A stretch of 64,000 nt of DNA, taken from contig NW_021833026.1 in the NCBI RefSeq assembly GCF_006345805.1, positions 558,001 through 622,000 of the forward strand, read 5' to 3'. The translations under genes were made by a program, and so were the position numbers. The notes under the pieces were generated by a model that made no database searches, had not been told where the DNA came from, and saw only the letters and a list, made by a program, of their open reading frames with translations. This DNA comes from Octopus sinensis. Lineage: Eukaryota. Shown piece after piece: positions 19,049 through 63,110 of this stretch. Within the stretch, counting starts at the first letter, position 1; each line of letters starts with the position of its first letter.

Positions 19049-19990
19049 ATGGGATTGACATTAATTGGTTTTAAGAGTGAATTAATGCTATTTCAGTTCT
19101 TGGACACCTTGGAAAAGTCGGCTATCTGTTTCAGGAGGTCGGGGATCCTGCGGGTTATTAAAAAACAGAAACCTCATATAGCAGGATTTCTTGCCTCTAA
19201 ATATGGAATGGTTGACAAACTATCTATCACTGAAAACTTCCCAAGAGAGGCTCATTTGCAATATTTATCGAATCAAATCAAGAACAAATCATTTCATTCT
19301 ATTTTGTTCAGATGTGAAGAGGATTCTAATGTTCACATTAAAATGTCTAGTGAGTGGTTCAACAAAGAGAACAATAAACCAAGAAGTGAAGCTTTTTATT
19401 GTATCTTGCAAGATCAAAATTTGTTCTTTCTACGTGTGGGGTGCTGTGCGATTATTGCAAGAAAGCTAAGAGGACAGTAGACCACATGGCTACCCGGTGG
19501 AATAGAATGCTAAACAGTGACTATGTAAGAAGGCACGACGAGGTTGTGAGATGCATCTATTTACACGTTTGCAGACATTTTGAAGTAAAGAAACTAAGAA
19601 GCTAAAGTCCCATTTGGTCCAATCTATAATGTCGAGATATAGTTTATCGACCCAAAATGTCGAGATACGGATAGATGCATCAATATCGACAAATACCCAA
19701 GTTCAGTTCAATAAGGGAGATATCTTTACGACAAGCTGAAGAATGAGATTACTATAGTTGAAGTAGGAATTACATTGCGGGGAAGACTCAAGCAAACCGA
19801 AATGGAAAAAGTACATAAATACGATCTTCTGGCTGGAGAACTAAAGATAGTTTACGGGTCACCTGTGAAAATTATTTCATTTGTGCTGACATGGGACAGA
19901 GTGGTTTCAACGTAAAAAAGCCTATATGAAAAAATTATTAGTTAAAGCCCCGATGAGAACATATATTCAGGTACTTGTGATAAAGATGAC
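19049..19990 (+). mobile_element. Degenerate 3' fragment of an RLE-type non-LTR retrotransposon
   Basis: FKSELMLFQFL, RSEAFYCILQDQNLF, CDYCKKAKRTVDHMATRWNRMLNSDYVRRHDEVVRCIYLHVC; related to the 41-44.5 kb element. Confidence 0.85.
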
Positions 19991-22860: not shown

Positions 22861-24330
22861 TTATTGTTGATGGTTTTGGGGGTTTAAAAATCTTCTTTTC
22901 AATTCTTTAGCCATCAAACCACGTTCTACAGACGTGTTGTTGAGAACGGAAGAATTTTCAGCAGCTCTTCTCGACAGGTAAGGCAATACATCCATGAGAA
23001 GTCCATAGGGGACACTTTTGTAGACATTGTACCCTGACATTCCCAGAGCGTATGTCACGTTGTCAGATACACCATAAAGTTGGCCAAACGAGACATATTT
23101 GGATGTGGGGTTGATATCTAATTTTTCCATTAAATCGACCACTTTAAGAATCGACTGCTCATTCTGTGTGGCTGCAATCAGACTGTACTTGTTTTCTTTT
23201 TTGGAAATTTTATTGAGGATGTGGTAGACCACTCGATCGTACATTTCCGACGTCTTTTCGAACGATTCATTGATAGGATTTGGAACTTTATTTGAAATGG
23301 CAGATTTTGTCTCAGACTCCATATAGGCACCCCGAACAATTTTAGCTCCCCAACAACGATTGTTGCCTTGAACTGTATCCAATTCCTCCAATAACGTGTC
23401 AAATGCAGTTTTTAGATAACACTGATGAGTATTCCAAACCATCGGTTTAGCTTTGTTGTGCTTGAACATCAAAGCTATTGTAAACAACTGAATTCCTCTG
23501 TTGAGCATTGTGTATTCCGCATCAACGAGGAGTCTTACCCCCTCGTTGATTGCACTTTCTCCAAACTTTCGGAGACATCCGACCGCATTCGACAAAAACA
23601 ACTGTTCGCTGGGTGTTAATGAATTGAAAATAGTCTGTTCTAATTTGACGTTATCTTCATTGAGCAATTTAAGCAGTTCAAAGACATAAAAACGAAAATC
23701 CTCCACTTTTTGAGTCCTTAAACCAAGTTCTACCAACAAAGATTGAGGAGCAAATGCGGTCATTTTGAAATGAATCATAGGAATGACATGGCCACACAAT
23801 TTACGAGCAATTTTGACACAATTTAGTGACCCTGAAAGGTTAATTAAGAGTTTATTGTGATATTTTCCACGTCCAGAAATTCTAGCCAAATCGTCTTCAC
23901 AAGCCAACATTAACAAAATGTTTATTCCTCGTTTATTCAAGTTTAATGAGACCTTCTCAAGCTCATCTTCCGTTTCTCCGCCGGCGAATTGCCCGTAAAT
24001 TGTGGATTTCATCAAATATTTAAATAATCGTTCTCTTAGTAAAAATTTAGTGGCCTTCATTAAAAAAATGGAATGAACTGAAATCAGCCGGAATGAACAT
24101 ATGTACAACACAACTATTGCTCTGAGTAGTTCTGCGTTGGTTTTAATATTCAGAGATTTTTCGATATTTTTGAAATCAGGTCTACAAATTTTGAGTTTTG
24201 GTAGGGTTTTTCTATATTTGACTATGTTACTATTCTCCTTCCATAAAATTAAAGATCCCCCGTGCGATGAACGGAACAAATATTTGGGGAATGTCTTCAG
24301 AATCTAGAATAATATAAACTATATTACCAT
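22861..24330 (-). CDS. PRODH2: Hydroxyproline/proline dehydrogenase, PRODH2-like
   Basis: YGQFAGGET, FKMTAF, LLVDAEYT, WNTHQCYLK, KIVRGAYM, GQLYG, VYKSVPYG, PYLSRRAAEN. ATG at 24330, a single 24-nt intron (24304-24327), then a 1443-nt exon. Confidence 0.85.
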
Positions 24331-35339: not shown

Positions 35340-38300
35340 GATGCTTAAAAGATGCTGGGATCCCCTAGACAGAACTCGGCTGAAAGAAAGAATAAGTGCC
35401 ATTGAAAAATCACTTTGTTATACAGCCCAATTTGAAAAAGAACGTGTTGGTTACGCCAATCAAAAATGCTCCACCCAAAACACCCCAAATTCTGGACAGC
35501 GTACAGTAAAATTACTGGAACCGGAACAAAGGCGGAAGTTATTCGCCTGAGACTTCCTGGAGGTTTGCCTGTCGAGCCAGGAGGAGATTACCGAACTCCT
35601 CCGCAATCAGCTCGCAAATGTTTTGAAAGCAGATCCATCTGCCTCCTTTCCTAAACCTCCTCCAGCAAATAACTCAGACAGATCGAAACACTGCCACCCG
35701 ATTACTGAATCCGAGACCTGGGAAGCAATAAGTGCAGCTAGAAATGCGGCTCCGGGATATGACAAGATCCCTATGTCCTGCTTCAAGCATGCATCAAGCT
35801 GTTTGGTGTCTCTGCTCACAAACCTCTTCAATTCCAGCCTAAAGAGAGGGTACGTCCCAAAATCATGGAAAAAAACTGAAGTTCGAATGGTCGAAAACCT
35901 AAGAAACCTAAAGAGGAAGCCTCGAGCTATAGGCCCATAAGCCTAATCTGCTCTATATCAAAGATAATGAGAGAATCGTCTACAGAAGCTAGTACGCCAC
36001 ATAGAAAAATCACTGGCTCTCCCACGATCAGTGGGGTTTTCGTCCTGGCCGGTCCTGTGCTGACTGCATCTATCGCTGAATTCGATAGTATCTAAGCAGG
36101 GGTTCTCAAGTGCGGCCCTCGGGGCCGCATGCGCCCCGAGAATCTTTTTGCGGCCCCGACTTCCAAACTTTAAAATAATTTTTTGATATAAAATTAATTG
36201 TAATTAATATTATTAAAGATAATATTTTAATACCTGTTTGTAAATATATTTCAGGTTGAGTATTTTTCATGCCATCAAAGAATATCGAACATTATCTCAA
36301 GAAAATAGAGAATTTCAAATTGAATGGAAAGAAAAGTTTTTTTTCGTTGAACTGAATGGTAAAGCTGTTTTTGTTTGATATGCAACTGTTCATTAATTCA
36401 TTGAAAAATTATACTATTGAACGTCATTATAAGAAGCACAATTTCCATATGTACTGATGGGGGGGGCGAATATGATTGGTCGTAATAAAGGGTTTCATGG
36501 ACTTTATTCAGAATGGAGACTTGAAAAAAATCTTGCCTATATTTTGGCAAACATTGTATCATTCATCAGGAGAATATAATCGCAAAGTCACTTAAAATGC
36601 AAAATGTAATAAGTACGGTGTTGTCCATTGTGAATTGGATACGCGGTAAATCTCTCAATCACAGGAGATTTAAAAAAATGTTAGTGGAAAATGACACAGT
36701 GCATAATGATGTGCTTTACCATACCACTGTTCGATGGTTGAGTCGTGCCGCGTGCCTAAAAGGTATATGTGCTTGTAGAAGTTAGATTTTATGAACTACT
36801 CCTCAAATAAGAGAATTTGTTAAAGACCACAAATACCATGATTTGTTGAGCAGTAAGAGAGTGGATTGCCGATTTAGCTTTTTGGTAGATCTAAAAACCC
36901 TCTCATTATCGTCGTTAAATTGTGAATTACAGGGGAAATATAAATTTTGCCATCAACTCTATGGATCTATGCTTCTTTTATATCAAAATTAAAACTTTGG
37001 AGGGATCAAATAATGCTCAAAGATACAATTCATTTTACTTGTTTGAGTGAAAATAAAGCTAACGGTTCATTTGAAAAATATACTACCATTATCAGTCACC
37101 TATTGTTGAATTTGAAAAACGTTCTAAGGTATTAAAATTTAGTTTATTTTAAGAATTTTGATGAAATTTGCCATCAATGAAAAATTTTTGCAGCACCATT
37201 CAATATAGATCCTAAGAATGCTCCGCCATCACTCAATTAGAATTGATAGACCTTCAATCAGATGTGCAATTTACCTCAGTGCAAAAGATTGAAAATTTAA
37301 TGGGAATTATAGTTCACTTCCCAAAGAAAAATATCCGAATATACTCATAAATGCTTATAAATATGCTTCATGTTCGGATCCACTTATTTATGTGAGTCAA
37401 TTTTCAGTAAAATGATTCACATAAAAAATAAATATCGAAATAAATTGACTGATAATCACTTATGCCAGCTTTTGCGATCTACATGTGCCTCCTATATTCC
37501 GTGTTATGACAAATTGTTAACAATTAGTTAAAATAGCTAACAATTTTTCGTTTTAGTTAACAATTTTCGTTTTAGTCATTTTCTTTAATTAATTAAGACT
37601 AACTATCTCGGTTTCTGAATAAAAAATGAATGAATCTAAAAAAAATTAGTTAAAAGTTAATGAAAGTTTTAATTTAATTTATTCTGCGGCCCCGAAGACA
37701 ATGGTTAATTATCGATTTGGCCCCGACGTTAAAAACTTGAGAAAACCCTGATCTAAAGCACGAGACTCTGGCTTATCGGCCAGTATTATCTGCTTGGATG
37801 TATCGAAGGCTTTCGACAGTGTCTGTCACTCAGTTTTGCTGGAAAATCTTGTGAATTGCGACATTGATGCGGAAACCCTTGAATGGCTAGCGAGCTTCTT
37901 GAATGGGAGGATCTCCTTTGTCAACTATCTTGGCCGAGACTCGAAAGCCATTCTCCAAAAAAGGGGAGTACCTCAGGGCTCAGTCCTAAGCCCGCTAGTA
38001 TTCAACGTATATATGGCAGACTTCCCTAAACCTGTGTTCATCTCAATGAATGTGCTCATCTATGCAGATGACGTCATTATCACGGACGAAACAGCCCTTC
38101 CGACGACGTCGGAAATGAAGCTAAAAATTTACATAGAACAAATACAACAGTGGATGGCAGTGAAATACTTGACTCTGTCAATCGAGAAATGCACGCTCAC
38201 TAGAGTGTCGGTGAAAAGAAGTGCGAAAATGTTACTATATACGATCGAATCCATCCGGAGGACCCACTCGTTTCTGTACCTGGGAGTCCAATTTTCCGAG

Positions 38301-38640
38301 AACGGAAGGTGTGAGGAAGATATCATCATGAGGAAAAAACGGTGCACACTGTGCTATTCATCTTCCGGGCAGCTATCCTTCCAGTACTGATGTATGGGCT
38401 GGAGGGGTGGATTTTGTCCCCCTCCAAGGCAAGAATTATAAAACTGCTGGAGAAAACGAGGAGATTAGCGCTCAAGGTGGCCTTCGGCGTAAATCTAAGA
38501 GAGAAAATACCGAGCTGGCGCGAAGTCTTTCCTATGATTGGCGAGCTTGCTGAAACCCAATTCCAAAAATTCCTAGAGAAGAGAAGAAAATAGCCCCGGA
38601 CGACCCTGTGTGTAAGGCCACTACTGGCCCTTAATTTCTT
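35340..38640 (+). mobile_element. APE-type LINE RT remnant split by a hAT insertion
   Basis: APGYDKIP, LFNSSLKRGYVPKSWK, GFRPGRSC, then after the hAT: LDVSKAFDSV, GVPQGSVLSPLVFNVYM, YADD, YLGV. Confidence 0.85.
36097..37750 (+). mobile_element. Buster/SPIN-like hAT DNA transposon, internally deleted
   Basis: TIRs caggggttctcaag / cttgagaaaaccctg; flanks atctaag and atctaaag (near-TSD with central TA); remnants of BED finger, CIIHQE, NHRRFK, TVRWLSR, FGSTY. Confidence 0.9.
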
Positions 38641-40958: not shown

Positions 40959-43900
40959 ATTAAAACCAATGTTTAATAATAATTAATTATGTAAATTCTA
41001 TCTTAAATTATTTAAGAATCCAGATCGTCAGTGATTTCTCTTCTTCGCTGGGAAGAAGAGTTTGCAACAAAATTCTCATCATTTTCCATTTCTGCGTCAA
41101 AGTAATTGTTCAACTGAGTGTCCTCACGACATGCCAGCTCCGCAAGTTGATTGGCGGCAGAGGCGTACTCCTCGTTGTCTACCTTCATCCCATGTCTGTG
41201 TTCAATAAGCATACTCTCTAGAGTCCTCTTCAGCACAACCGACTGGATGTATGTCCTCGTTCCTTCTTCAATGGATAATTTGTCCATATGACTTTTAAAG
41301 AACTTTGAGACAACTCCATCCCATGTCAAGACAATTGGAATAATCTTCACTTTTGCTTCATAGAGAACCGACAGTTCGTTTGCAAGCAGGTCATATTTGT
41401 GAAATTTCTCCACTTCAACTTGCTTTAAACGGTCTTGCGAGGTAACTCCCACTTCGATTAAATGAATTTCTCTTTTCCTCTTGTCATAAACGAAGATATC
41501 AGGTTTATTGAATTGAACCTTTGTTTCAGTCATAATTGAAGTGTCAACTCTGATTTCGACATTTTGGGTCGACATTGTTGACACGACTGAATGTCCTTTC
41601 AATTTCCTGCTTCGTTTTATTCCATACATTCGACACAAGTGGAGATGAATACACTTTACCACTTCGTTGTGTCTTCGGAGATAATCACTGTTTAGCATCC
41701 TACCACACCGCGTGGCTAGATGGTCAACAGTCTGCCTGCTTTTTTTGCAGTGGACGCATAGTGATCCCGTGTATGCAAAGAACAAATTCCTATCTTGCAA
41801 AAGACAGTACAATGCTTCGCTTCGTGGACCATTGTTCCCTTTCGATAGCCATTGCGAAGAAGTAGATATGTCGACATCTGATTCCTCCATACATTTGAAC
41901 ATCACCGAGTGTAGTGATTTACTGTTAATTCGGTTAAGCAAGAGTTTCCTTTGTGCGTCCTTCAGTAACTCAATGGTCAGATTTTCCCTGCCGACAGCTG
42001 CATATTTGGAGACAAGAAATTCTGCGATTGTGGCTAAGTGCCATTTTTTTCCTTTTATTACTCGCAGAATACCCGACCTCCGCAACAGGTAGTCGACTGT
42101 TTTTCCAAACTTTTAAGAAACTGGAAGAGCATTAATTCGCTTTTGAAAGAAATTGAGGCAAGTCCTCTTCCAAGGGTCTTGCGGTCCAAATACAACCTCT
42201 CCTTATTTGCAGGCTGGAGGTGTAACTTGAGAGTCGTAAGTAATCGGCGTATTTGTTGGTCAATATCATCAAATTCGTAAGGTTCATATTGATTAGCCCA
42301 ATATAATAATATATAGGGATAATGCATATTCATTGATTCCACGAAACAAATTTACAGCATTCAGGTTTGTTTTTGACAACATAGTTATCCTCTTCTTGAC
42401 ATTCTCCAATATGGAGTCCATAACTTTATTCTTGAGAACATTACTTCCGCCATCTTCAAGTACACCCAAGTAGCGATATCCGTTGATTCCATCGACAGTC
42501 TCACAGCATGATAAAGATTCCACATTAGATGCTGATTTTTCGGAATTCATCTCTAGGCCGACACTTTCAAAAAATCCATTAACAGCCTCCATCATTTTGA
42601 CTAACACATCTTCTTTGAGGGCAACTATTTTCAGATCGTCAATAAAGAAGAAATGATTGGTGGAGTATGTCAACATATTGGGATCTTCCCGACTAATTTC
42701 GAGTTTGGGAAACATGGAGTTAAGCATCCTGCTTAGGGGATCCATCGCCATAACGAATAGCAGCGGGGACAATGAATCTCCTTGGAGTATTCCCCGGCTT
42801 AACTTTACTTTCCCAATTCTTTTCCCATCGATATGTAAGTTTACTGTCCACTTCTTGACTATGTTTTTTACAAAGCTGACAATCCAATGTGGTATTCCAG
42901 AGCAATCCAATACGTGGAACAAGAACTCGTGATCAACTGAGTCAAATGCCTTCTTCACATCGACCCAAGCAGAATAGAGGCCATTTCCATACTCCTTATT
43001 TAAGCATTGGTTAATGAGGGCTTGCTCTTTGGCGCCTTGACATTGCTTCCTCGTCCCAAGCTGATTATCTGAGATTAAGCCAAATGCCTCGATGAAATCG
43101 GCCAGTTTGGCATTAACACATTTGGTGACAAGTTTATACAAAGTTGGCATACACGTTATAGGGCGTAAGTCCTTCGGGGTCTCACACTCACTTTTTTTAG
43201 GGATCAAGTAAGTTACGCCAGTGTAAAACCAGCTATCAGGCGTGTACTCTCCATTAATTATTCGGACTATCTCTTTACACAGAAACCCATGCAAAGAATC
43301 CATCTTCTTTAAGAAAAAGTTATACGTTCCGTCGCATCCGCATGCCTTCCAGTCAGGTGCATATTTGAGCATATCCATAATAAAATCACTTGTGAATTGA
43401 GGTCGCATGGTTTCAGCGCCAGTACACCTCACACCCACAAAATCATAAACTACGGGCCCCATATTTTTCTTGCTCCAGACATCTTCCCAAAATGATAAGC
43501 ACTCACCATCACCAAACCCATACAGGGTGGCTTCGTTGCTCGAAGATAAGTTTCGATAAAATCTTCTGCGGTTTAATTCAAAACACGCATTGTCTTTCCG
43601 GAAATTTTTCCTCGAGGAATGGATAGATATCTGTTTCTTTTTGATTCTAATTAGATCATTCAATAGAGTCTCAATTCTGGTTAGCTCCCCCTTCTTAGAC
43701 TTCTTATATCCGTAGCGGCAGAGAACATCCATTGCCTTTTGCTTTTCTGCCTGAGGCAAGGTTTGTTTGGAGAAGGAACGAACTGTGTCAATTTCATCTG
43801 CTAATTTAGAGATTTTTCTTCCGTGTTTTCCAACCATGTGCTCTGTGGTCTGGCTCTCGTAGTTAAGGCCAAATAAGCACACTGTGCAGCATATAGAATA

Positions 43901-44534
43901 TCGGTAATTTGATTAATATCTTGGGGCGGATCATCTTTTGTAATATGATAAATTGCAGAATTTAATCCAGCCAGGATATCAGTTTTTACCATCCTTCGTT
44001 GCACCTTTGGAGTTGGCTTTCGAGAGTCTCTCTGAATAGACTGAACTTTCCCAATTTGGAATTTGAGTTCCTCTAGGCAATTTCTGAAACTGGAAATTTC
44101 TACGTCCACATCATCTTGCACTCTGGAAGAGTCGCATCTTCCTTGCACATTGTTATTCCGTCTAGCCATGCTCTTTAGTTGGCATAAACTGGAGCACTTT
44201 GCCGAGTACTTCTCATTGAACTTCTCCAGGACAAGGTTCCAACCACCTCTTGGCATCCTTCCAAGTCTTTGCTTCGCGGCAAGGGCAATCTGAGACACCC
44301 ATTCGCCTTCAGAGACACCATTGACATTTCCGATGATCGCAGAAAGAGAATGCAAGTTAGTTTTGGCAGCATCACCAACAAGATCTTCTTTAACACCATT
44401 AGCTCTTGTGGCATTGTGAGGTCCCATAGGCGACGGTCCTGTCTTTTTTAAGTTCTTTTTATTTGCAGGAAGGCCCGTAGGTTTCGTTTTCCTTAACTGC
44501 TTGGAAACGTACATGCACACACCACAACAACTAA
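40959..44534 (-). mobile_element. Apparently full-length RLE-type (R4/Dong-like) non-LTR retrotransposon with 18-bp TSD
   Basis: RT: LRPITCMPTLYKL, WVDVKKAFDSV, GILQGDSLSPLLF, FFIDD, YRYLG. RLE: CVHC..TVDHLATRC, RRHNEV, NKPDI, EVG, EKFHKY. TSD ataat(a/t)tttttgtaggtg at 40941-40958 and 44535-44552. Confidence 0.92.
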
Positions 44535-55808: not shown

Positions 55809-56192
55809 TCGGACTCGAATAGAAGGAGAATCGACTGAAAGCAGACGCAATAATTAAAAATCAATTTTACCTGGACTTTCAAATAAATTATAATGCTCTT
55901 AATTATATGGTTGTCTTTCTGAACGAATTAGTTAGCCTTGTTCTGTCAGGGAAATGAGACTAGGCTCACATCCAGTGATCAACATTTTCAAAAAATGACC
56001 TTCCCAGTGATTCTAAAGAAAAAGCAAATCGCATTGCACTAGTTCTGGCATCTGGTAGCGAGTAAAGCGCGAATTCTACCACATTGAACGCCAATTGAAA
56101 TATAAATGGACAAATTAGTAACTTGAGAAAAAGATGTAAAGTCGACTTGAAAACAAAGATGGAAGATATAAAATAATCTCAAATTTTAATTA
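55809..56192. repeat. About 387-bp direct repeat, copy 2
   Basis: Near-identical to 51858-52244 with a few substitutions and single-base indels. Confidence 0.92.
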
Positions 56193-56706
56193 CAAATAAA
56201 TTTGTGTGGCCGTTCAGACAGCCCTTTTATTTTCCAAGACATAAAAATTATTTTAAATACCTACCTAACACAGGCCATTAATATATATTATTATCATTAA
56301 CCAGACATTTTTCAATTTGCAAGGAAAAAACAGTTTTTCTAAGTGTATTTTTAAGGAATTTTCAACGCTTTTAGCCATTTCGTCAATTTTTATCATTACT
56401 CACAGGTAAACTAAATGTCAGTAAACTATATTCTGACGACTGCTAATAACTAAAGCTGCAATGATCTTGTCTTTCTTGGCTGCCAAATAATCGGAATAGT
56501 GGCGGAGGCTTGGAATTCAAGAGGCAAATTGCCATGGGACTGAGTGCTTTCCTGAAAATGAACAATATATGAAAAATCGGAGATATTTGTTTAAGGAATA
56601 AATTCAATCGTGTTTTTCAAATATATAAATATTTCAAATTATCAAAATATTTAAATAAATTTCAAATAAAACTATATCTTGTTCTTGTGGGAACAACTAG
56701 AAGTTA

Positions 56707-59329
56707 ATGGACAAATATGATAACGAAATTATTCAAAATGTATTTTAACAACCAAAACATAGGATATTTGGGGAGAAAGTCTCTTAAAAAAGAAGACTCC
56801 TCAAAAACCTTCCCAACCCCCGAGAACTCTAAAATACTCTCCCTCATCCTCCTCCAAGACCAGTCTTATAAAGAATGGAATAAAACAATTAAATAGCCTG
56901 GAGACATCCCAGAAGGAATCCACCCCTCAAACCACCCCCCAAATGTCCTCCCCCTCCTTCGAATTTCCCGCCATTACTGATATCCCAATCGACAAATCTA
57001 CAAGTCGAGGGAGGACCTCGAATTACAGACGGCTGAACATGAAAAGACAATATCACCCACCTGGAAAGAGAAAGTCGAGAAAATATCCGCGATTCCGTGG
57101 AAGGACAGTCACGGAAGACCCCTCAGGTGAGGACCAGGTGATATTCCAGCTGACTTTGTGGTGGAACACACAGAGAGAGTGGTCTCCCTCTGCGATGGGT
57201 GGGAATTGGAAGGGGAGTGTCCTTCATTTGAGGGTTCTGTGGTGAGGGATGTGATAAAACGTGGTGATTGGGGAGTATCCTTCTAGATCAGTCATTGGTG
57301 GCCAATTTGTTCAAAATGGAGTCAATTGTGGGAGTAATAAACACAGCAGGACTCCACTTTGCTCAAAGAAGGGGGTCTATTGGCCTGGTTATTGTGGATG
57401 ATGATATAATCACTGAATTACCCCAATTTGTAGTGCACTGACTGACCAATGTAGCACTCCAATCCATCTGTTCGGTGTATTAACAATAAATGTAATTATT
57501 ATGAAATTAAGTCAATCACTGCCCAACTGACAGACCCGAATATTACCACAGTCGTCCTTCCCAGCAGAATATGTCTCAGGACCCTGCCTTTACTGGCTGT
57601 GGCATTGGGGACCAGGCTTGTCTCATTCGTGGCAATAATCGACGGTCAGAGGGTACTACCTGTGCCTGGATTTTCCACTGATTTATTCAACACAGTTCAA
57701 GTGTGACTTTTTGTTACAGTTTGTATAGAATATAAAGCACTACCATGGAATTACACGTTTTTGTGCTTTTGTAAACATAATGGACTGTGAATTGCTTGAG
57801 AAGGCTAAAATGGTGTTTAATACTGACAAGATTGTGAGTTATCCACAGACTGAGACACTCCTAAAGTGTTGTCCTGTCAATGAAATGGACTGTCGGGTAG
57901 AATAACAATTTGAGTGGGGAGAGTATTGTAGGGATAATGGAGCATGTCCACCTTCAGTACTCTTCGTTTATAGTGGTGTGTGACACTCCAAGCACAGTGG
58001 AGACATTATACAACAATATTGCCCGGACTACTGCTTTAGGCATGATTTGATATGTCAGTGTTCAGGCACTGTGCTGGCAGTCCATCAATATTCCCCAAAG
58101 GCACTGAGACTTGGAGTCCTCAAAAGACCCAAATTCAACCTTCTGTTCACAACTGAGAGATTCGGTCGTTATTTATTGTCTGATTGTGTGAGTACTGGTG
58201 AGTGTTGTGTCTGATTGGAAGCATTCATTTACTATGGAGTGCTACAGTCATTCTTCTCTGCCATTGGTCTAGTCAGGAATATGTTCTGTGTTACCCCCAT
58301 TGATCAGGTCTCCTCCTTTAATGACTCCTCTCGACATGTCCATCAACTCCATGTGGATAAATGTCAGTTTAGAGAGCTTTTGTGTGACTTGTTTGTGGGT
58401 GATCACAAATATATATTCCTTACTAGTGGTGATAAATATGATCTTCATCCCAATGGTGGTGTTTGTGTGTTATTAGGCAGTGATTGGGGGAGTTTGTGCT
58501 CGAATTGAGGAGGTGGTTGGTCACCAAAGGTTCCATTCTGTCTCCAATGGGTCTCCACGAGTTTGTGAGGTCGGATTTGATGGGACTGAGGATGAGTGGA
58601 CTTGTCTCCTCAATGAAGTGATATTACACGCCTCATGTTAATAGAATACATTTTTGTCACAGATTGCTAATTTTGTAAAGCCAGTTGACAATTGGTCGTC
58701 GTTCAGAGTGGATATAATTGATTTCTGTAATAAAATGGAATATGAATTGGTCTATGCAATATCAATGCTGTATTCTCTCAAATGGAGGGATCAGGGGGAT
58801 GGGTTTGTGGCCTCTTCTGGGTTGTCGGTGGAAATGAGTGATTATGGCACTGTTTTTGTGCATGATCCTCCCTATTTTGATTCAGAGAGAGTCGAAGAAT
58901 TGTTCAATGATTTGGTCACTCACCAGAGTCGGATAATTGAGAGGGGAATGGCACATGTGTCCCTAATCCACTATACTGTCCAGTAATGTGTGCATGACTA
59001 ATATTAGTCCCACTGACAATCCTCGACTAATCGACATGAATGAGATTAGACAAGAATATGAGAATAAAAGTGTGAAGGGAGTCTCATTCGAGCAAGATTT
59101 GGACTTGTTGAATGAATTGGTGGGGAGGTTTGTGAAGATGTATGGGGATGTACCGGGGATGAGTGGGAGAGTTGTGGCAATGCTCCTACACGGAATTGGG
59201 ACTCCTGCATTCCCGTCCTTCATTTGGAAATCTGTTAAACAGTTTTGGAGATGCGGGTTGTGTTTTGACTTTAACTCCCTCGTGAGATCAGCTCACAGTC
59301 TTTTACACATCCGGTCTTTTGATATTTGA
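56707..59329 (+). CDS. RECQL4: RECQL4-like protein with degenerate helicase motifs
   Basis: SNYRRLNMKRQ (cf. ENYVRLNMKQK), RHVH, FRVDIIDFCNKMEYELVYAISMLYSLKW...GLSVEMS, and C-terminal SGRVVAMLLHGIGTPAFP...FWR (cf. SSRAVARIFHGIGSPCYP...FWR); more than 10 micro-introns. Confidence 0.82.
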
Positions 59330-59879
59330 TTTTCTAATAAAATTACAGTTTACTCTCGATTGGAAGCTATAACTACATTTTTTGGACAAAATGCTTTTTT
59401 TGGTAAGGAAATTCCATTACTCGCCACGTTAAAATATTAAAAATTTATTAAAAAATTAATTTTGCAAATATTTATACTGCGTGTCTTTTTTGTGAACATG
59501 TAGAGTTTCCTGTCAGGTATTTCTAAAGTGGAGCTAGTGGTCTCCCCTTTGGGAGCTACAGAACATTTTAGGGAAGCCGCAAAAAATTGAGATCTTGAAT
59601 AACAAAAATTTAAATTGTATTATTATTAATAAGCACACTGCAAAATAACGTTAGTAAAGTTATCCCGCTTGTGCCACCCTCTCCTGGATGCGTTTTGTTA
59701 ATCGCTTCCAAGTCCCTTTGTTCCTCGATAGTTCCCTCAGGTAAAAAATATTTGATTTTTATTTTTGACTAGGACTGGCATTGATGACAGCTTTCAGTCT
59801 CGGGTCGGTTTCATTCTCGGCTCGCGATAAATAGATTTTCAATCTGACATCATGGCAATTCAAGCTTTTGCAAAGTAAC

Positions 59880-60740
59880 AAAGAAAATTTTCCATATACA
59901 CTGATTTAACAAACAAATTTCCTAATCTGCAGACGAGAGCTCAATTTGTTCAATTTTTAATCAAACTATTCTGTTAAACGTGGCTTCATCAAAACTAGTG
60001 GCGGTGATTGAGTCCATGACCTCTACTATAGTTTATTGTTTTCGTGACCAGACTAATAATTTTTTTTATCTTTAAAATTTTTGAGCACAAATTTGTCTGA
60101 TGATAATACAATGAAAATGTGCAAATGTATTCAACTCGCATTTTCGTACCAACTCCAGCATGTCGTCGAGCCATATTAGGGACACCATCGGTGCACAAAC
60201 ATACAAGCTTCTTTAAATCAAATCCATAATAAAAGAGAATTTGTTGTAGTTTTACAGACTTTTAGTAATATCGTGCATTAGTACCAGTTCGAGAAATTTT
60301 TTTATAAAATTTAAAAATCGAGTCACAAGCCCAAAAAAGATTGCTAATTGGGCAATTCCAATAACGTTGGCTGTTTCATCGATCGCAGTTGAAAAATATT
60401 AAAATTTCAACAATTCAAATTTTAATTGCTGTTTCAAATTTCTTTGACATTTCTTTGATTCAAATTTTAAAGACATTTCTTTGATATGTTCGGCAACTGT
60501 GTTTCTAGTCAAAAAAATCTCTAATGAAATTCTCATTATCTGGACAAATAATTTTGACTGTTTTGACCAGACATTGTTTGATGAAATCAGCATCACAATA
60601 TGATTTCCCATTCACTGCAAGCATTCTGCTGATTTCATAACTTGCAGTAACTGATGCAATACTTCGACTGTGATTTTTTGTGAAATGAGTCTGTGACGAA
60701 GTCAAATTATTTCATAACTCATTTAGCTTTGAAAGACGCG
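59880..60740 (-). mobile_element. GTF2IRD2/SPIN-like hAT transposase remnant
   Basis: ASYEISRMLAVNGKSYCDADFIKQCL, LTRNTVAEHI, TDG(V)PNM, GHGLNHRH; frameshifted. Confidence 0.8.
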
Positions 60741-61349: not shown

Positions 61350-63110
61350 ATATGGTTCTTTTGAAATTAACGACAAACCAACTTAATGAAATAAAAAATT
61401 TTGATGACACCACTACTATACACGATAAAGAAAAAAGGAGAAGGCTCAGGACGCTTAAAAATCGTTTTTGCTTCAAAGTTCCTGAAAAAACGTATATAAA
61501 AGTCGGAAATAAAAAACTGCGTTTTTTTACTCTAGAAGAAAGTGAGCTAAAGTTAAAAATTATTGAGGTATCCATTTTAAAACAATTGAAGATCGAGCAT
61601 ATGAATACTCATTTTGTTAGAGACAGAATGCTCTCGTTATTAAGAGACCAAATATATTCAGTAACAAGGGAAGAAATTTGTAGTGTGATAGCAAAATGTG
61701 TCTATTGCCAAGTAATGTTGTTAATCAGTGTTAGTCGAAAAATTTCATGGCAACAAAACCAACACTTTCCTTATAAAAATTCATATTTTAGTCTTTTTTA
61801 GCAGTCGAACTTATTTATGCGAAACCAACAACAAAGTTAAAAAAACAAGAAATAAGAAAAGCTATTTTTTAAGAAGCCAATCGATACTGAAGACTGGAGG
61901 ATCGTCTGAAATATAATTTTATTTTTGTCAAAAATACCGTTTTTGTCATCTTTCTTATTCCCTTTATCATCGTTTTGATCTTCGCCGCATCTCTTTTGAT
62001 CTTTTTCTTGGTTTCGAAGTCCTTTTGGTTTTCTGTTGCCACACACTTTTGGGATTTTTAAATTTCTCATAAAATGTGTATATGTCCGTTTTTTATCGAC
62101 GACATCTGATAAAATAATTGTTATACTAATCAAACAATATATTTGCCAGTCATCAGTTATGATAGGGTCTGGTAGTCTTATAAAATTGGCTCTTGGATTA
62201 TCCCATTGACGCATAGCTTCTCTCTCGATATCTATAAACGATATCGATATCTATCCAAATGTCATCATTCATTGTATTTGAATTGTCCCATTCTCTCCAC
62301 AGAGATTGTCTTTGTTCGTTTCTTTGTCTTTGAGTCTCATTTTGGCTATTCCAGTTGATGTCTGACCACTCATCGGCTTTACATCGACATGGAATTCTCA
62401 TGCAAGTACAGTTGTGATTATCTTCAGGCATATTTAATTGTTAACGCGTAAATAATATCGACTGTATTTATAGTCGATTTGGGGCGTTTCGGCTTAATAA
62501 AATTAGAAAATCAAAAAAAATTTACGACATTGACGCGTAATTTATTATTAAAATAGTAAAAAATATATTTTATTACTAATATTTTTTCAATATATTATTA
62601 GTAAAAAAAAGAATCCCAAAATAGTTTTTATTTACTCCTTTTGCATAACACAAATTCTTGAGTTTAGCCATTTCCCCAATGGCTTGTAAAAACTATTGAC
62701 TGGGTCTTTAAATAATACTTTCAAATTACCTTAGTAGTTCTTTTATCTTTAGAATACTGAAAACCAGCAAATTTTGCACAAATTTTGCACAAAAACTAAC
62801 CCTAACCCTAACAACAAAACCAACAAAACCAGAATGACATTACAGACAATGGGAAAGAGTTCAAGAATAAATGCATAAAGATAATGTGCTCCGAATTAAG
62901 ACGACCTAGAACACACCGGGTTCAGGGGCAAGTGGAGAGGTTTCTTATAGTCAATTTATTTGTAGGTTTAATCAATCAATTAAAAGATGGATTAGCTCTA
63001 CAAGTGCATACAACGGAATGCTAGGGAAATTCAAGGAATTTTATCAATAAATTGTATACAAATATAACACTACACAACATGAAACTACGAAATGGGCGCC
63101 CTTCAAAATT
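61350..63110 (+). mobile_element. Second Ginger2-like integrase remnant (N-part 61350-61840; core fragments 62840-63110)
   Basis: EHMNTHFVRDRM...VTREEICSVIAKCVYCQ (HHCC) with micro-intron-like inserts; TDNGKEFKN and QGQVERF downstream. Confidence 0.65.
61900..62431 (-). CDS. Hypothetical small protein lying between the Ginger2 fragments
   Basis: ATG ORF MPEDNHNCTCMRIPCRCKADEWS... overlapping a second open frame; no homology recognised. Confidence 0.2.

What the first reader, a model, noticed from the sequence alone, without database searches (positions are those of the whole stretch)
56707..59329. RECQ4 as a natural pseudo-helicase: frame intact, ATPase motifs erased
Seen: removing 21-28-nt introns (plus one 42-nt and one GC-AG) keeps one frame through the RecQ core, colinear with human RECQL4 as I recall it. 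Walker A PTGAGKS aligns to FKMESIV (57310-57330). Walker B DEAH aligns to DGQR (57641-57652). Motif III LTATA aligns to FVNIM. Motif VI QAVGRAGR aligns to SAIGLVRN (58257-58280), losing the arginine finger. Structural positions remain (SFIVVCD, AVH, FTTERFG, RHVH), as do the NYxRLNMK segment and the RECQ4 C-terminal domains. The extreme N-terminal Sld2-like homeodomain was not found; the protein starts near a WGxxL motif. Known: the N-terminal region of RECQ4 carries the replication-initiation role and can support viability without the helicase in vertebrate cells. Inference: a catalytically dead RECQ4 kept as a scaffold.
Basis: partly seen in the sequence, partly recalled or inferred. Interest (0 to 1): 0.85.

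Follow-up and report, generated by a model that had tools for sequence, protein, structure and literature searches.

The report
ATPase-dead RECQ4 gene in a dicyemid

Summary
At 56707-59329 (+), removing 11 tiny introns (23-37 nt) gives a 776-aa open frame. A profile of 48 diverse RECQ4 orthologues matches it at 71 bits (E=3e-24). The match comes from the C-terminal region (56.6 bits), the N-terminal NYxRLNMK motif and the RHVH segment, all in RECQ4 order.

The helicase core between them scores -1.8 bits. In 75 held-out orthologues it scores 160-620 bits. Walker A, DExH, motif III and motif VI are kept in 98-99% of 150 RECQ4 representatives. Here they read NLFKMES, DGQR, FVNIM and SAIGLVRN. No GK[ST], DExH or QxxGRxxR occurs in any forward frame of the locus, so alternative splicing cannot restore them.

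Weak matches in the right order and spacing (none of 1000 shuffles has more than one) show the middle is still the helicase remnant. An intact spliceable frame (1 of 200 shuffles), coding-frame codon usage and an AATAAA after the stop argue against an old pseudogene.

The contig is labelled Octopus sinensis but looks dicyemid.

Not shown: expression, selection (no relatives found), or whether an active second copy exists. The scaffold role, docking through the tail reported to bind Mcm7 and ssDNA, is inference.

The parts
56707..59329 (+). RECQ4-derived gene: 12 exons, 776 codons plus a TGA stop. Exons: 56707-56739, 56763-57126, 57150-57263, 57287-57429, 57455-57694, 57729-57896, 57922-58039, 58066-58197, 58222-58455, 58493-58617, 58645-58982, 59008-59329.
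   Evidence: Spliced model. RECQ4 profile 71.2 bits, E=3e-24. All 16 tested variants of the last three introns score 67.6-71.3 bits.
56763..57126 (+). N-terminal basic, low-complexity exon. It carries two RECQ4 N-terminal motifs, DIWGESLL (56763-56786; family vWGxHLN) and SNYRRLNMKRQY (NYRRLNMK = 57021-57044; family NF/YvRLNxKKK), and five [ST]P sites in about 60 aa.
   Evidence: Profile domain 1 scores 8.6 bits, i-E 2.5e-5. The ORF fragment is third-best in the whole window, E=0.008 at Z=2719. Both motifs are conserved across orthologues.
57150..58455 (+). Degenerate helicase core (aa 133-499, seven exons). Walker A position reads NLFKMES/FKMESIV (57310-57330), Walker B DGQR (57641-57652), motif III region FVNIM (57768-57782), motif IV strand SFIVVCD (57964-57984), motif V FTTERFG (58146-58166), motif VI SAIGLVRN (58257-58280), and RHVH (58332-58343).
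   Evidence: Core profile -0.9/-1.8 bits against 160-620 bits in 75 held-out orthologues. No Pfam family at E<=10. Three weak matches all lie on the diagonal, and 0 of 1000 shuffles has more than one. Global profile alignment z=2.3-3.2 in three of four gap settings. Motif alignment.
58040..58065 (+). Intron 7, GC-AG in the homology-preferred model. It is the only non-canonical splice site.
   Evidence: A canonical 23-nt GT-AG alternative (57980-58002) also keeps the frame but replaces about 22 aa. Codon usage weakly favours the GC-AG reading.
58493..59326 (+). RECQ4-specific C-terminal region: a shortened zinc-binding-domain region, a winged-helix segment (exon 11) and the extreme C-terminal block MSGRVVAMLLHGIGTPAFPSFIWKSVKQFWRCGLCFDFNSLV (59159-59284).
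   Evidence: Profile domain 3 scores 56.6 bits, E=8e-20. C-terminal profile 66.8 bits. BLASTP to a human RECQL4 isoform 48.5 bits, E=2e-9. 52 bits to a scorpion RECQ4 over the last 70 aa.
59336..59341 (+). AATAAA, a likely polyadenylation signal starting 7 nt after the stop codon.
   Evidence: Read directly from the sequence.

Best explanation
This is the RECQ4 (RECQL4/Hrq1-family) gene of a dicyemid-like animal with tiny introns. Shown by computation: the protein keeps the RECQ4 layout, but its SF2 helicase core has drifted until no ATP-binding or ATP-hydrolysis residue remains, so it cannot be an ATPase or helicase. Inferred: the gene is still a working protein-coding gene, and the protein acts without catalysis. 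It probably acts as an adaptor. [quoted passage not shown] Its two N-terminal motifs and its cluster of S/T-P sites correspond to the disordered Sld2-like region that acts non-catalytically in activating the replicative helicase. The dead core would then serve only as a structural spacer.
For: RECQ4 ancestry:
- Profile of 48 diverse orthologues: 71.2 bits, E=3e-24, three domains in RECQ4 order.
- Unbiased six-frame scan: three exons of this gene rank top of 2,719 fragments.
- 133 of 150 RECQ4 representatives hit it at E<10 (Z=150), the best at 52 bits.

Dead ATPase:
- No Pfam DEAD or Helicase_C match at E<=10.
- Core scores -1.8 bits, against 160-620 bits in 75 held-out orthologues. Orthologues whose C-terminus is as diverged as this one still score 430-555 bits in the core.
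- GKS is kept in 133/134 representatives, DExH in 134/135, [ST]AT in 137/140 and GRxGR in 133/134. None is present here.
- None occurs in any forward frame of 56000-59800.

The middle is the helicase remnant:
- All 3 weak profile matches lie within 25 residues of the diagonal. No shuffle out of 1000 had more than one.
- Global profile alignment z=2.3-3.2 in three of four gap settings.
- hhalign P=0.04, in register.

Still a gene:
- No stop or frameshift over 776 codons. The core can be crossed with 6 short introns, matched by only 1 of 200 shuffles.
- The annotated frame has the best codon usage in 9 of 12 exons and 6 of 7 core exons, with stop codons left out of the scoring.
- AATAAA lies 7 nt after the stop.
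- Other genes in the window keep strong Pfam matches, e.g. Pro_dh at 169 bits, so the loss is specific to this core.

Mechanism, from the literature:
- The last 92 aa of human RecQ4 raise ssDNA binding about fourfold (PMC5490261).
- The extreme C-terminus binds the Mcm7 winged-helix domain, and the N-terminus acts non-catalytically in CMG activation (bioRxiv 10.1101/2025.08.05.668837).
- Recql4 K525A mice are normal, whereas truncations that also remove the C-terminus are pathogenic (PMC6636780).
Against: - There is no transcript evidence and no relative to measure selection against. Searches found none.
- One intron is GC-AG in the preferred model. It could instead be a recently broken splice site.
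- Each local core match is insignificant alone, and one of four gap settings gave only z=1.5.
- The N-terminal Sld2-like domain was not found, so the classical essential part of RECQ4 is incomplete.
- In Xenopus egg extract, RecQL4 ATPase activity does matter for origin firing, especially without Mcm10 (same preprint). A dead copy as the only RECQ4 is therefore not an expected state.
- A second, active RECQ4 elsewhere in the genome cannot be excluded with these tools.
- Structure prediction of the spliced protein could not be run.
Confidence: 0.6

Rival explanations
1. It is a pseudogene: a RECQ4 gene that is no longer used, with an open frame that is either a recent leftover or luck.
For: There is no expression evidence. 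The database that holds this contig's ProDH protein returned no protein matching this locus. One splice site is GC rather than GT. The catalytic core looks neutral when compared with the family.
Against: The core has diverged to about random similarity, yet 776 codons carry no stop or frameshift, and all 11 introns are still removable in frame. The C-terminus keeps 57-67 bits while the core keeps none. That unevenness needs selection. Codon usage fits the coding frame. Only very recent inactivation would fit.
Confidence: 0.2
2. It is a degenerate paralogue. The genome also holds a normal, active RECQ4, and this copy was freed to lose catalysis and take on a side role or decay.
For: Loss of catalysis after duplication is the usual route to pseudoenzymes (general knowledge). 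Nothing here excludes a second copy outside the window.
Against: No second RECQ4-like piece lies in the 64-kb window. The D. japonicum genome is reported as strongly reduced, with 5,012 genes (PMC6736024), which makes retained duplicates less likely. This copy keeps N-terminal motifs, core remnant and C-terminus in the ancestral order, as an orthologue would.
Confidence: 0.25
3. It is a gene-model artefact: the true transcript uses other exons or splice sites that restore Walker A and DEAH.
For: Intron choice is uncertain at several places.
Against: No GK[ST], [AG]xxxxGK[ST], DExH/D, [ST]AT in the right place or QxxGRxxR exists in any of the three forward frames of 56000-59800. No helicase-core match lies on either strand elsewhere in the window.
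Confidence: 0.03
4. The middle 370 aa are not a helicase remnant but unrelated sequence that replaced the core.
For: hmmsearch, hmmalign and Pfam see nothing significant there.
Against: The length matches (367 aa against about 380). Three weak matches fall on the diagonal, which no shuffle out of 1000 equals. Global alignment z reaches 3.2. The family's hydrophobic strand patterns are kept at motifs II, IV, V and VI.
Confidence: 0.1

Closest known systems
Animal RECQ4 / human RECQL4 (structure 5LST)
   Same: Same order of parts: vWGxHLN motif, NF/YvRLNxKKK motif, a core of about 370 aa, RHVH, winged-helix region, and the terminal HGIGSPxFP...FWR...L..DFN block.
   Different: All four catalytic motifs are gone. 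The core is undetectable by profile (-1.8 bits against at least 160). The zinc-binding-domain region is about half as long. No N-terminal Sld2-like domain. 776 aa against about 1,200.
Mouse Recql4 K525A knock-in (PMC6636780)
   Same: A RECQ4 that cannot bind ATP yet supports normal physiology. In that study, truncations that also remove the C-terminal domain are pathogenic.
   Different: That is a single engineered point mutation in an otherwise intact helicase. Here nature has erased the whole active site and let the core drift.
Yeast Sld2 and Hrq1, and C. elegans SLD-2 (own knowledge)
   Same: They show that the replication-initiation and helicase parts of RECQ4 can be separated or lost in evolution.
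   Different: Those lineages split or dropped whole domains. Here the helicase domain is kept as a dead shell, and the Sld2-like start is the part not found.
Known pseudo-helicase modules, e.g. the inactive C-terminal cassette of Brr2 (own knowledge)
   Same: A helicase fold kept for binding or regulation without catalysis.
   Different: A different family. Brr2 keeps an active cassette in the same protein. No such partner is shown here.

Membership tests
RECQ4 (RECQL4/Hrq1) orthologue group | RECQ4-specific C-terminal region (winged-helix part and extreme C-terminal block) | tested here: met
   56.6 bits, E=8e-20 to the profile. 66.8 bits to the C-terminal profile. BLASTP E=2e-9 to a human RECQL4 isoform.
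RECQ4 (RECQL4/Hrq1) orthologue group | N-terminal family motifs vWGxHLN and NF/YvRLNxKKK | tested here: met
   DIWGESLL and SNYRRLNMKRQY are present. Profile domain 8.6 bits, i-E 2.5e-5.
RECQ4 (RECQL4/Hrq1) orthologue group | SF2 helicase core with Walker A (GKS), DExH, motif III and motif VI (GRxGR) | tested here: not met
   No Pfam DEAD or Helicase_C match. Core -1.8 bits. The motifs read NLFKMES, DGQR, FVNIM and SAIGLVRN. They are absent from all forward frames. They are 98-99% invariant in 150 representatives.
RECQ4 (RECQL4/Hrq1) orthologue group | N-terminal Sld2-like domain (Pfam PF11719) | tested here: not met
   No Pfam hit. No credible match to the profile's N-terminal positions anywhere in the window. 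Only 13 residues precede the WG motif. A very diverged or distant exon cannot be excluded.
RECQ4 (RECQL4/Hrq1) orthologue group | Zinc site of the RECQ4 zinc-binding domain | tested here: inconclusive
   The region is shortened (about 73 aa against about 131) and only loosely aligned. 'SPRVC' aligns with human 'PRRVC' by eye.
RECQ4 (RECQL4/Hrq1) orthologue group | DNA-dependent ATPase and 3'-5' unwinding activity | not testable with these tools
   Needs recombinant protein. The sequence predicts none.
Pseudoenzyme (pseudo-helicase) | Homologous to an enzyme family but lacking its catalytic residues | tested here: met
Pseudoenzyme (pseudo-helicase) | Expressed and kept by selection | tested here: inconclusive
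   Open spliceable frame, coding-frame codon usage, uneven conservation and AATAAA all favour it. There are no transcripts and no relatives for dN/dS.
Pseudogene | In-frame stops, frameshifts or lost splice sites | tested here: not met
   None in 776 codons. The single GC-AG intron has canonical alternatives that also keep the frame.

The most novel reading that the evidence does not exclude
This is the animal's only RECQ4. Dicyemids would then replicate and maintain their genome with a RECQ4 that has no ATPase and no Sld2-like start. The indispensable module of RECQ4 would be the extreme C-terminal docking block plus the two short N-terminal motifs, with the helicase fold needed only as a spacer. 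That would be a natural counterpart of the helicase-dead mouse.
Probability: 0.3. Interest if true: 0.8.

Novelty: new variant of a known kind. Interest (0 to 1): 0.6.

Why it matters
Whether RECQ4 needs its helicase activity in vivo is a live dispute. ATP-binding-dead mice are normal (PMC6636780). In frog egg extract, by contrast, the ATPase promotes origin firing, most visibly without Mcm10 (bioRxiv 10.1101/2025.08.05.668837).

A lineage that erased the active site but kept the frame, the N-terminal motifs and the C-terminal block would show which parts selection really holds on to. It points at the extreme C-terminus as the part to study. My literature searches found no report of a naturally ATPase-dead RECQ4.

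The weight of the finding depends on two untested points: that the gene is expressed, and that no active copy exists.

Tried and rejected
- A minimal-intron path using GT-AG introns only gave a 761-aa model with no Pfam or PDB hit. I replaced it with the homology-guided model.
- That model also had no Pfam family at E<=10 and no RECQ4 hit in PDB by phmmer.
- It had no hit at E<=1 in the word-indexed 5.8-billion-protein search. That was a prefilter miss, because the same protein scores 52 bits against RECQ4 locally.
I used it with a human RECQL4 isoform instead, to collect diverse orthologues.
- By its description, structure prediction has the same limit to contiguous window translations. It was not run on the spliced protein, and I did not try to get round this.
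- A mammal-only profile gave 32 bits.
- hmmalign would not align the core.
- My first semi-global alignment script was uninformative because free end gaps let it skip everything. I replaced it with a true global version.
- An exact look-up of a window ORF found nothing.
- A metagenome scan with the last exon found no relative (one search was a frame error).
- Papers on dicyemid genomes do not mention RecQ or helicases.

Full report
**What is there.** The region 56707-59329 on the + strand reads as one gene once 11 very short introns are removed. The introns are 23, 23, 23, 25, 34, 25, 26, 24, 37, 27 and 25 nt. That leaves 12 exons and 776 codons, from the first ATG after an in-frame stop to TGA at 59327-59329. 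AATAAA follows 7 nt after the stop. Several introns have alternatives that also keep the frame. Intron 7 is GC-AG in the model that homology and codon usage prefer, and a canonical 23-nt GT-AG alternative exists. None of these choices affects what follows.

**Is it RECQ4?** Standard searches fail. There is no Pfam family at E<=10, no RECQ4 hit in PDB sequences, and nothing in the word-indexed protein search.

Targeted tests are clear:
- BLASTP against a human RECQL4 isoform aligns aa 570-762 to the human C-terminal region (48.5 bits, E=2e-9) and picks out NYRRLNMK against NYVRLNMK.
- I collected 150 RECQ4 representatives at 50% clustering and built a profile from 48 near-complete ones. It scores the protein at 71.2 bits, E=3e-24.
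- That score comes from three domains in RECQ4 order: the N-terminal motif region, the RHVH segment and the C-terminal 230 aa (56.6 bits).
- An unbiased scan of all 2,719 six-frame ORF fragments of the window puts three exons of this gene on top, in the right order.
- The protein hits 133 of the 150 representatives at E<10. The best is a scorpion RECQ4, at 52 bits over the last 70 residues.
- Both N-terminal motifs, vWGxHLN and NF/YvRLNxKKK, are family-wide features.

**Is the ATPase erased?** Yes, and the loss is specific to this gene.
- The 367-aa stretch between the recognised parts scores -0.9 to -1.8 bits against the RECQ4 core profile.
- In 75 orthologues left out of the profile, the core scores 160-620 bits, typically 2-11 times the C-terminal score.
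- Orthologues whose C-terminus is as diverged as this one (40-100 bits) still score 430-555 bits in the core.
- Across the 150 representatives, GKS is kept in 133 of 134, DExH in 134 of 135, [ST]AT in 137 of 140 and GRxGR in 133 of 134.
- Here the aligned positions read NLFKMES, DGQR, FVNIM (less certain) and SAIGLV-RN.
- No GK[ST], DExH/D or QxxGRxxR exists in any forward frame of 56000-59800, so no splice variant of this locus can restore them.
- Other genes in the window keep strong Pfam matches: Pro_dh 169 bits, RRM 63 bits, plus TPR, WD40 and zf-UBR. General fast evolution therefore does not explain the loss.

**Is the middle still the helicase remnant?** Probably.
- Each local profile match is insignificant, and hmmalign declines to align the region.
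- However, the three weak matches all fall within 25 residues of the main diagonal. In 1000 shuffles, none had more than one such match.
- A global profile alignment beats shuffles with z=2.3-3.2 in three of four gap settings and z=1.5 in the fourth. The reversed sequence behaves like a shuffle.
- hhalign gives P=0.04 for the motif Ia region, in register.

**Gene or pseudogene?**
- The 1.3-kb core can be crossed with six short GT-AG introns. Its reverse complement cannot be crossed, most other window segments cannot, and only 1 of 200 dinucleotide shuffles does as well.
- Codon usage was trained on other window genes and scored without stop codons. The annotated frame is best in 9 of 12 exons and 6 of 7 core exons.
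- The core has drifted to about random similarity, yet there is not one stop in 776 codons, and the C-terminus remains well conserved. Long neutral decay does not fit that combination.
- Very recent inactivation cannot be excluded. I found no transcripts and no relatives for a dN/dS test.

**Where it comes from.** The window's proline/hydroxyproline dehydrogenase ORF is 100% identical to an NCBI protein named for Octopus sinensis. The next best hit in 5.8 billion proteins is 39%. The contig is VCDQ01001555.1 of GCA_006345805.1, 892 kb long.

Introns under 30 nt are reported in animals only for myxobolid myxozoans and Dicyema japonicum (PMC13644364). D. japonicum lives in the kidney of O. sinensis. 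Its genome has 36.7% GC, many LINEs and 5,012 genes (PMC6736024). The window has about 35% GC and carries LINE reverse transcriptases. The contig is therefore most likely dicyemid DNA assembled with its host. This is inference; I did not compare it with a dicyemid assembly.

**How it most likely works (inference).** The protein cannot hydrolyse ATP. What selection has kept is the following:
- The extreme C-terminal block. In human RecQ4 the last 92 aa raise ssDNA affinity about fourfold (PMC5490261). In frog this region mediates binding to the Mcm7 winged-helix domain, docking RecQL4 on the replicative helicase (bioRxiv 10.1101/2025.08.05.668837).
- Two short N-terminal motifs in a basic stretch rich in S/T-P sites. 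This resembles the disordered Sld2-like region that acts non-catalytically in helicase activation (same preprint).

An adaptor that bridges replisome or repair partners, with the dead core as a spacer, fits these facts. It also fits the normal phenotype of ATP-binding-dead mice, in contrast to truncations that also remove the C-terminus (PMC6636780). Against it, the same preprint finds that the ATPase contributes to origin firing. A dead copy as the only RECQ4 would therefore be unexpected.

**Comparison and novelty.** The gene descends from RECQ4 but fails the family's enzymatic definition, so I class it as a pseudo-helicase variant of RECQ4. Evolution is known to split or drop RECQ4 parts (Sld2 and Hrq1 in yeast; own knowledge). 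Keeping the helicase domain as a dead shell while retaining the tail was not found in the literature I could search. I rate it a new variant of a known kind.

**Limits.**
- No eukaryotic genome collection was available to look for a second copy or for orthologues.

Noticed in passing
whole window; ProDH ORF at 22861-24279 (-): The window lies on VCDQ01001555.1 of the Octopus sinensis assembly GCA_006345805.1. Its ProDH is annotated as an octopus protein. The tiny introns, about 35% GC and a next-best protein hit of only 39% indicate dicyemid parasite DNA filed under the host, so parasite proteins probably sit in databases under the name Octopus sinensis.
   Followed up: partly
L001 (record 570861-598568), window about 12861-40568: Only one gene (ProDH, stretched over 7.7 kb) is called in 27.7 kb. 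Yet the same stretch holds recognisable WD40, RRM (SF3B4-like, by eye) and TPR (Hop/STIP1-like, by eye) exons. Genes with tiny introns, including the RECQ4-like gene, seem to be missed by the annotation.
   Followed up: partly
42293-43882 (-), 41012-42085 (-), 43801-44520 (-), 37794-38390 (+), 19049-19480 (+): LINE-type retrotransposon ORFs (RVT_1, 108 bits) and related copies that share the motif 'RRSGILRVIK'. This fits the repeat-rich, LINE-rich dicyemid genome described in PMC6736024.
   Followed up: partly
58040-58065: The only non-canonical (GC-AG) intron in the preferred model. A canonical 23-nt GT-AG intron at 57980-58002 also keeps the frame but gives a Cys-rich 22-aa segment instead of CDTPSTVETLYNNIARTTALG.
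   Followed up: yes
56763-57000: Five [ST]P sites within about 60 residues of the N-terminal exon (KTPQK, YSPSS, STPQT, TTPQM, SSPSF). They resemble the CDK-site cluster of Sld2/RECQ4 N-termini (own knowledge). No statistics were done.
   Followed up: no
61352-61801 (+) and 59998-60261 (-): Downstream of the gene there is an ORF with a weak integrase zinc-binding match (E=6e-4) and, by eye, a remnant of a hAT-like transposase. These are probably mobile-element debris.
   Followed up: no
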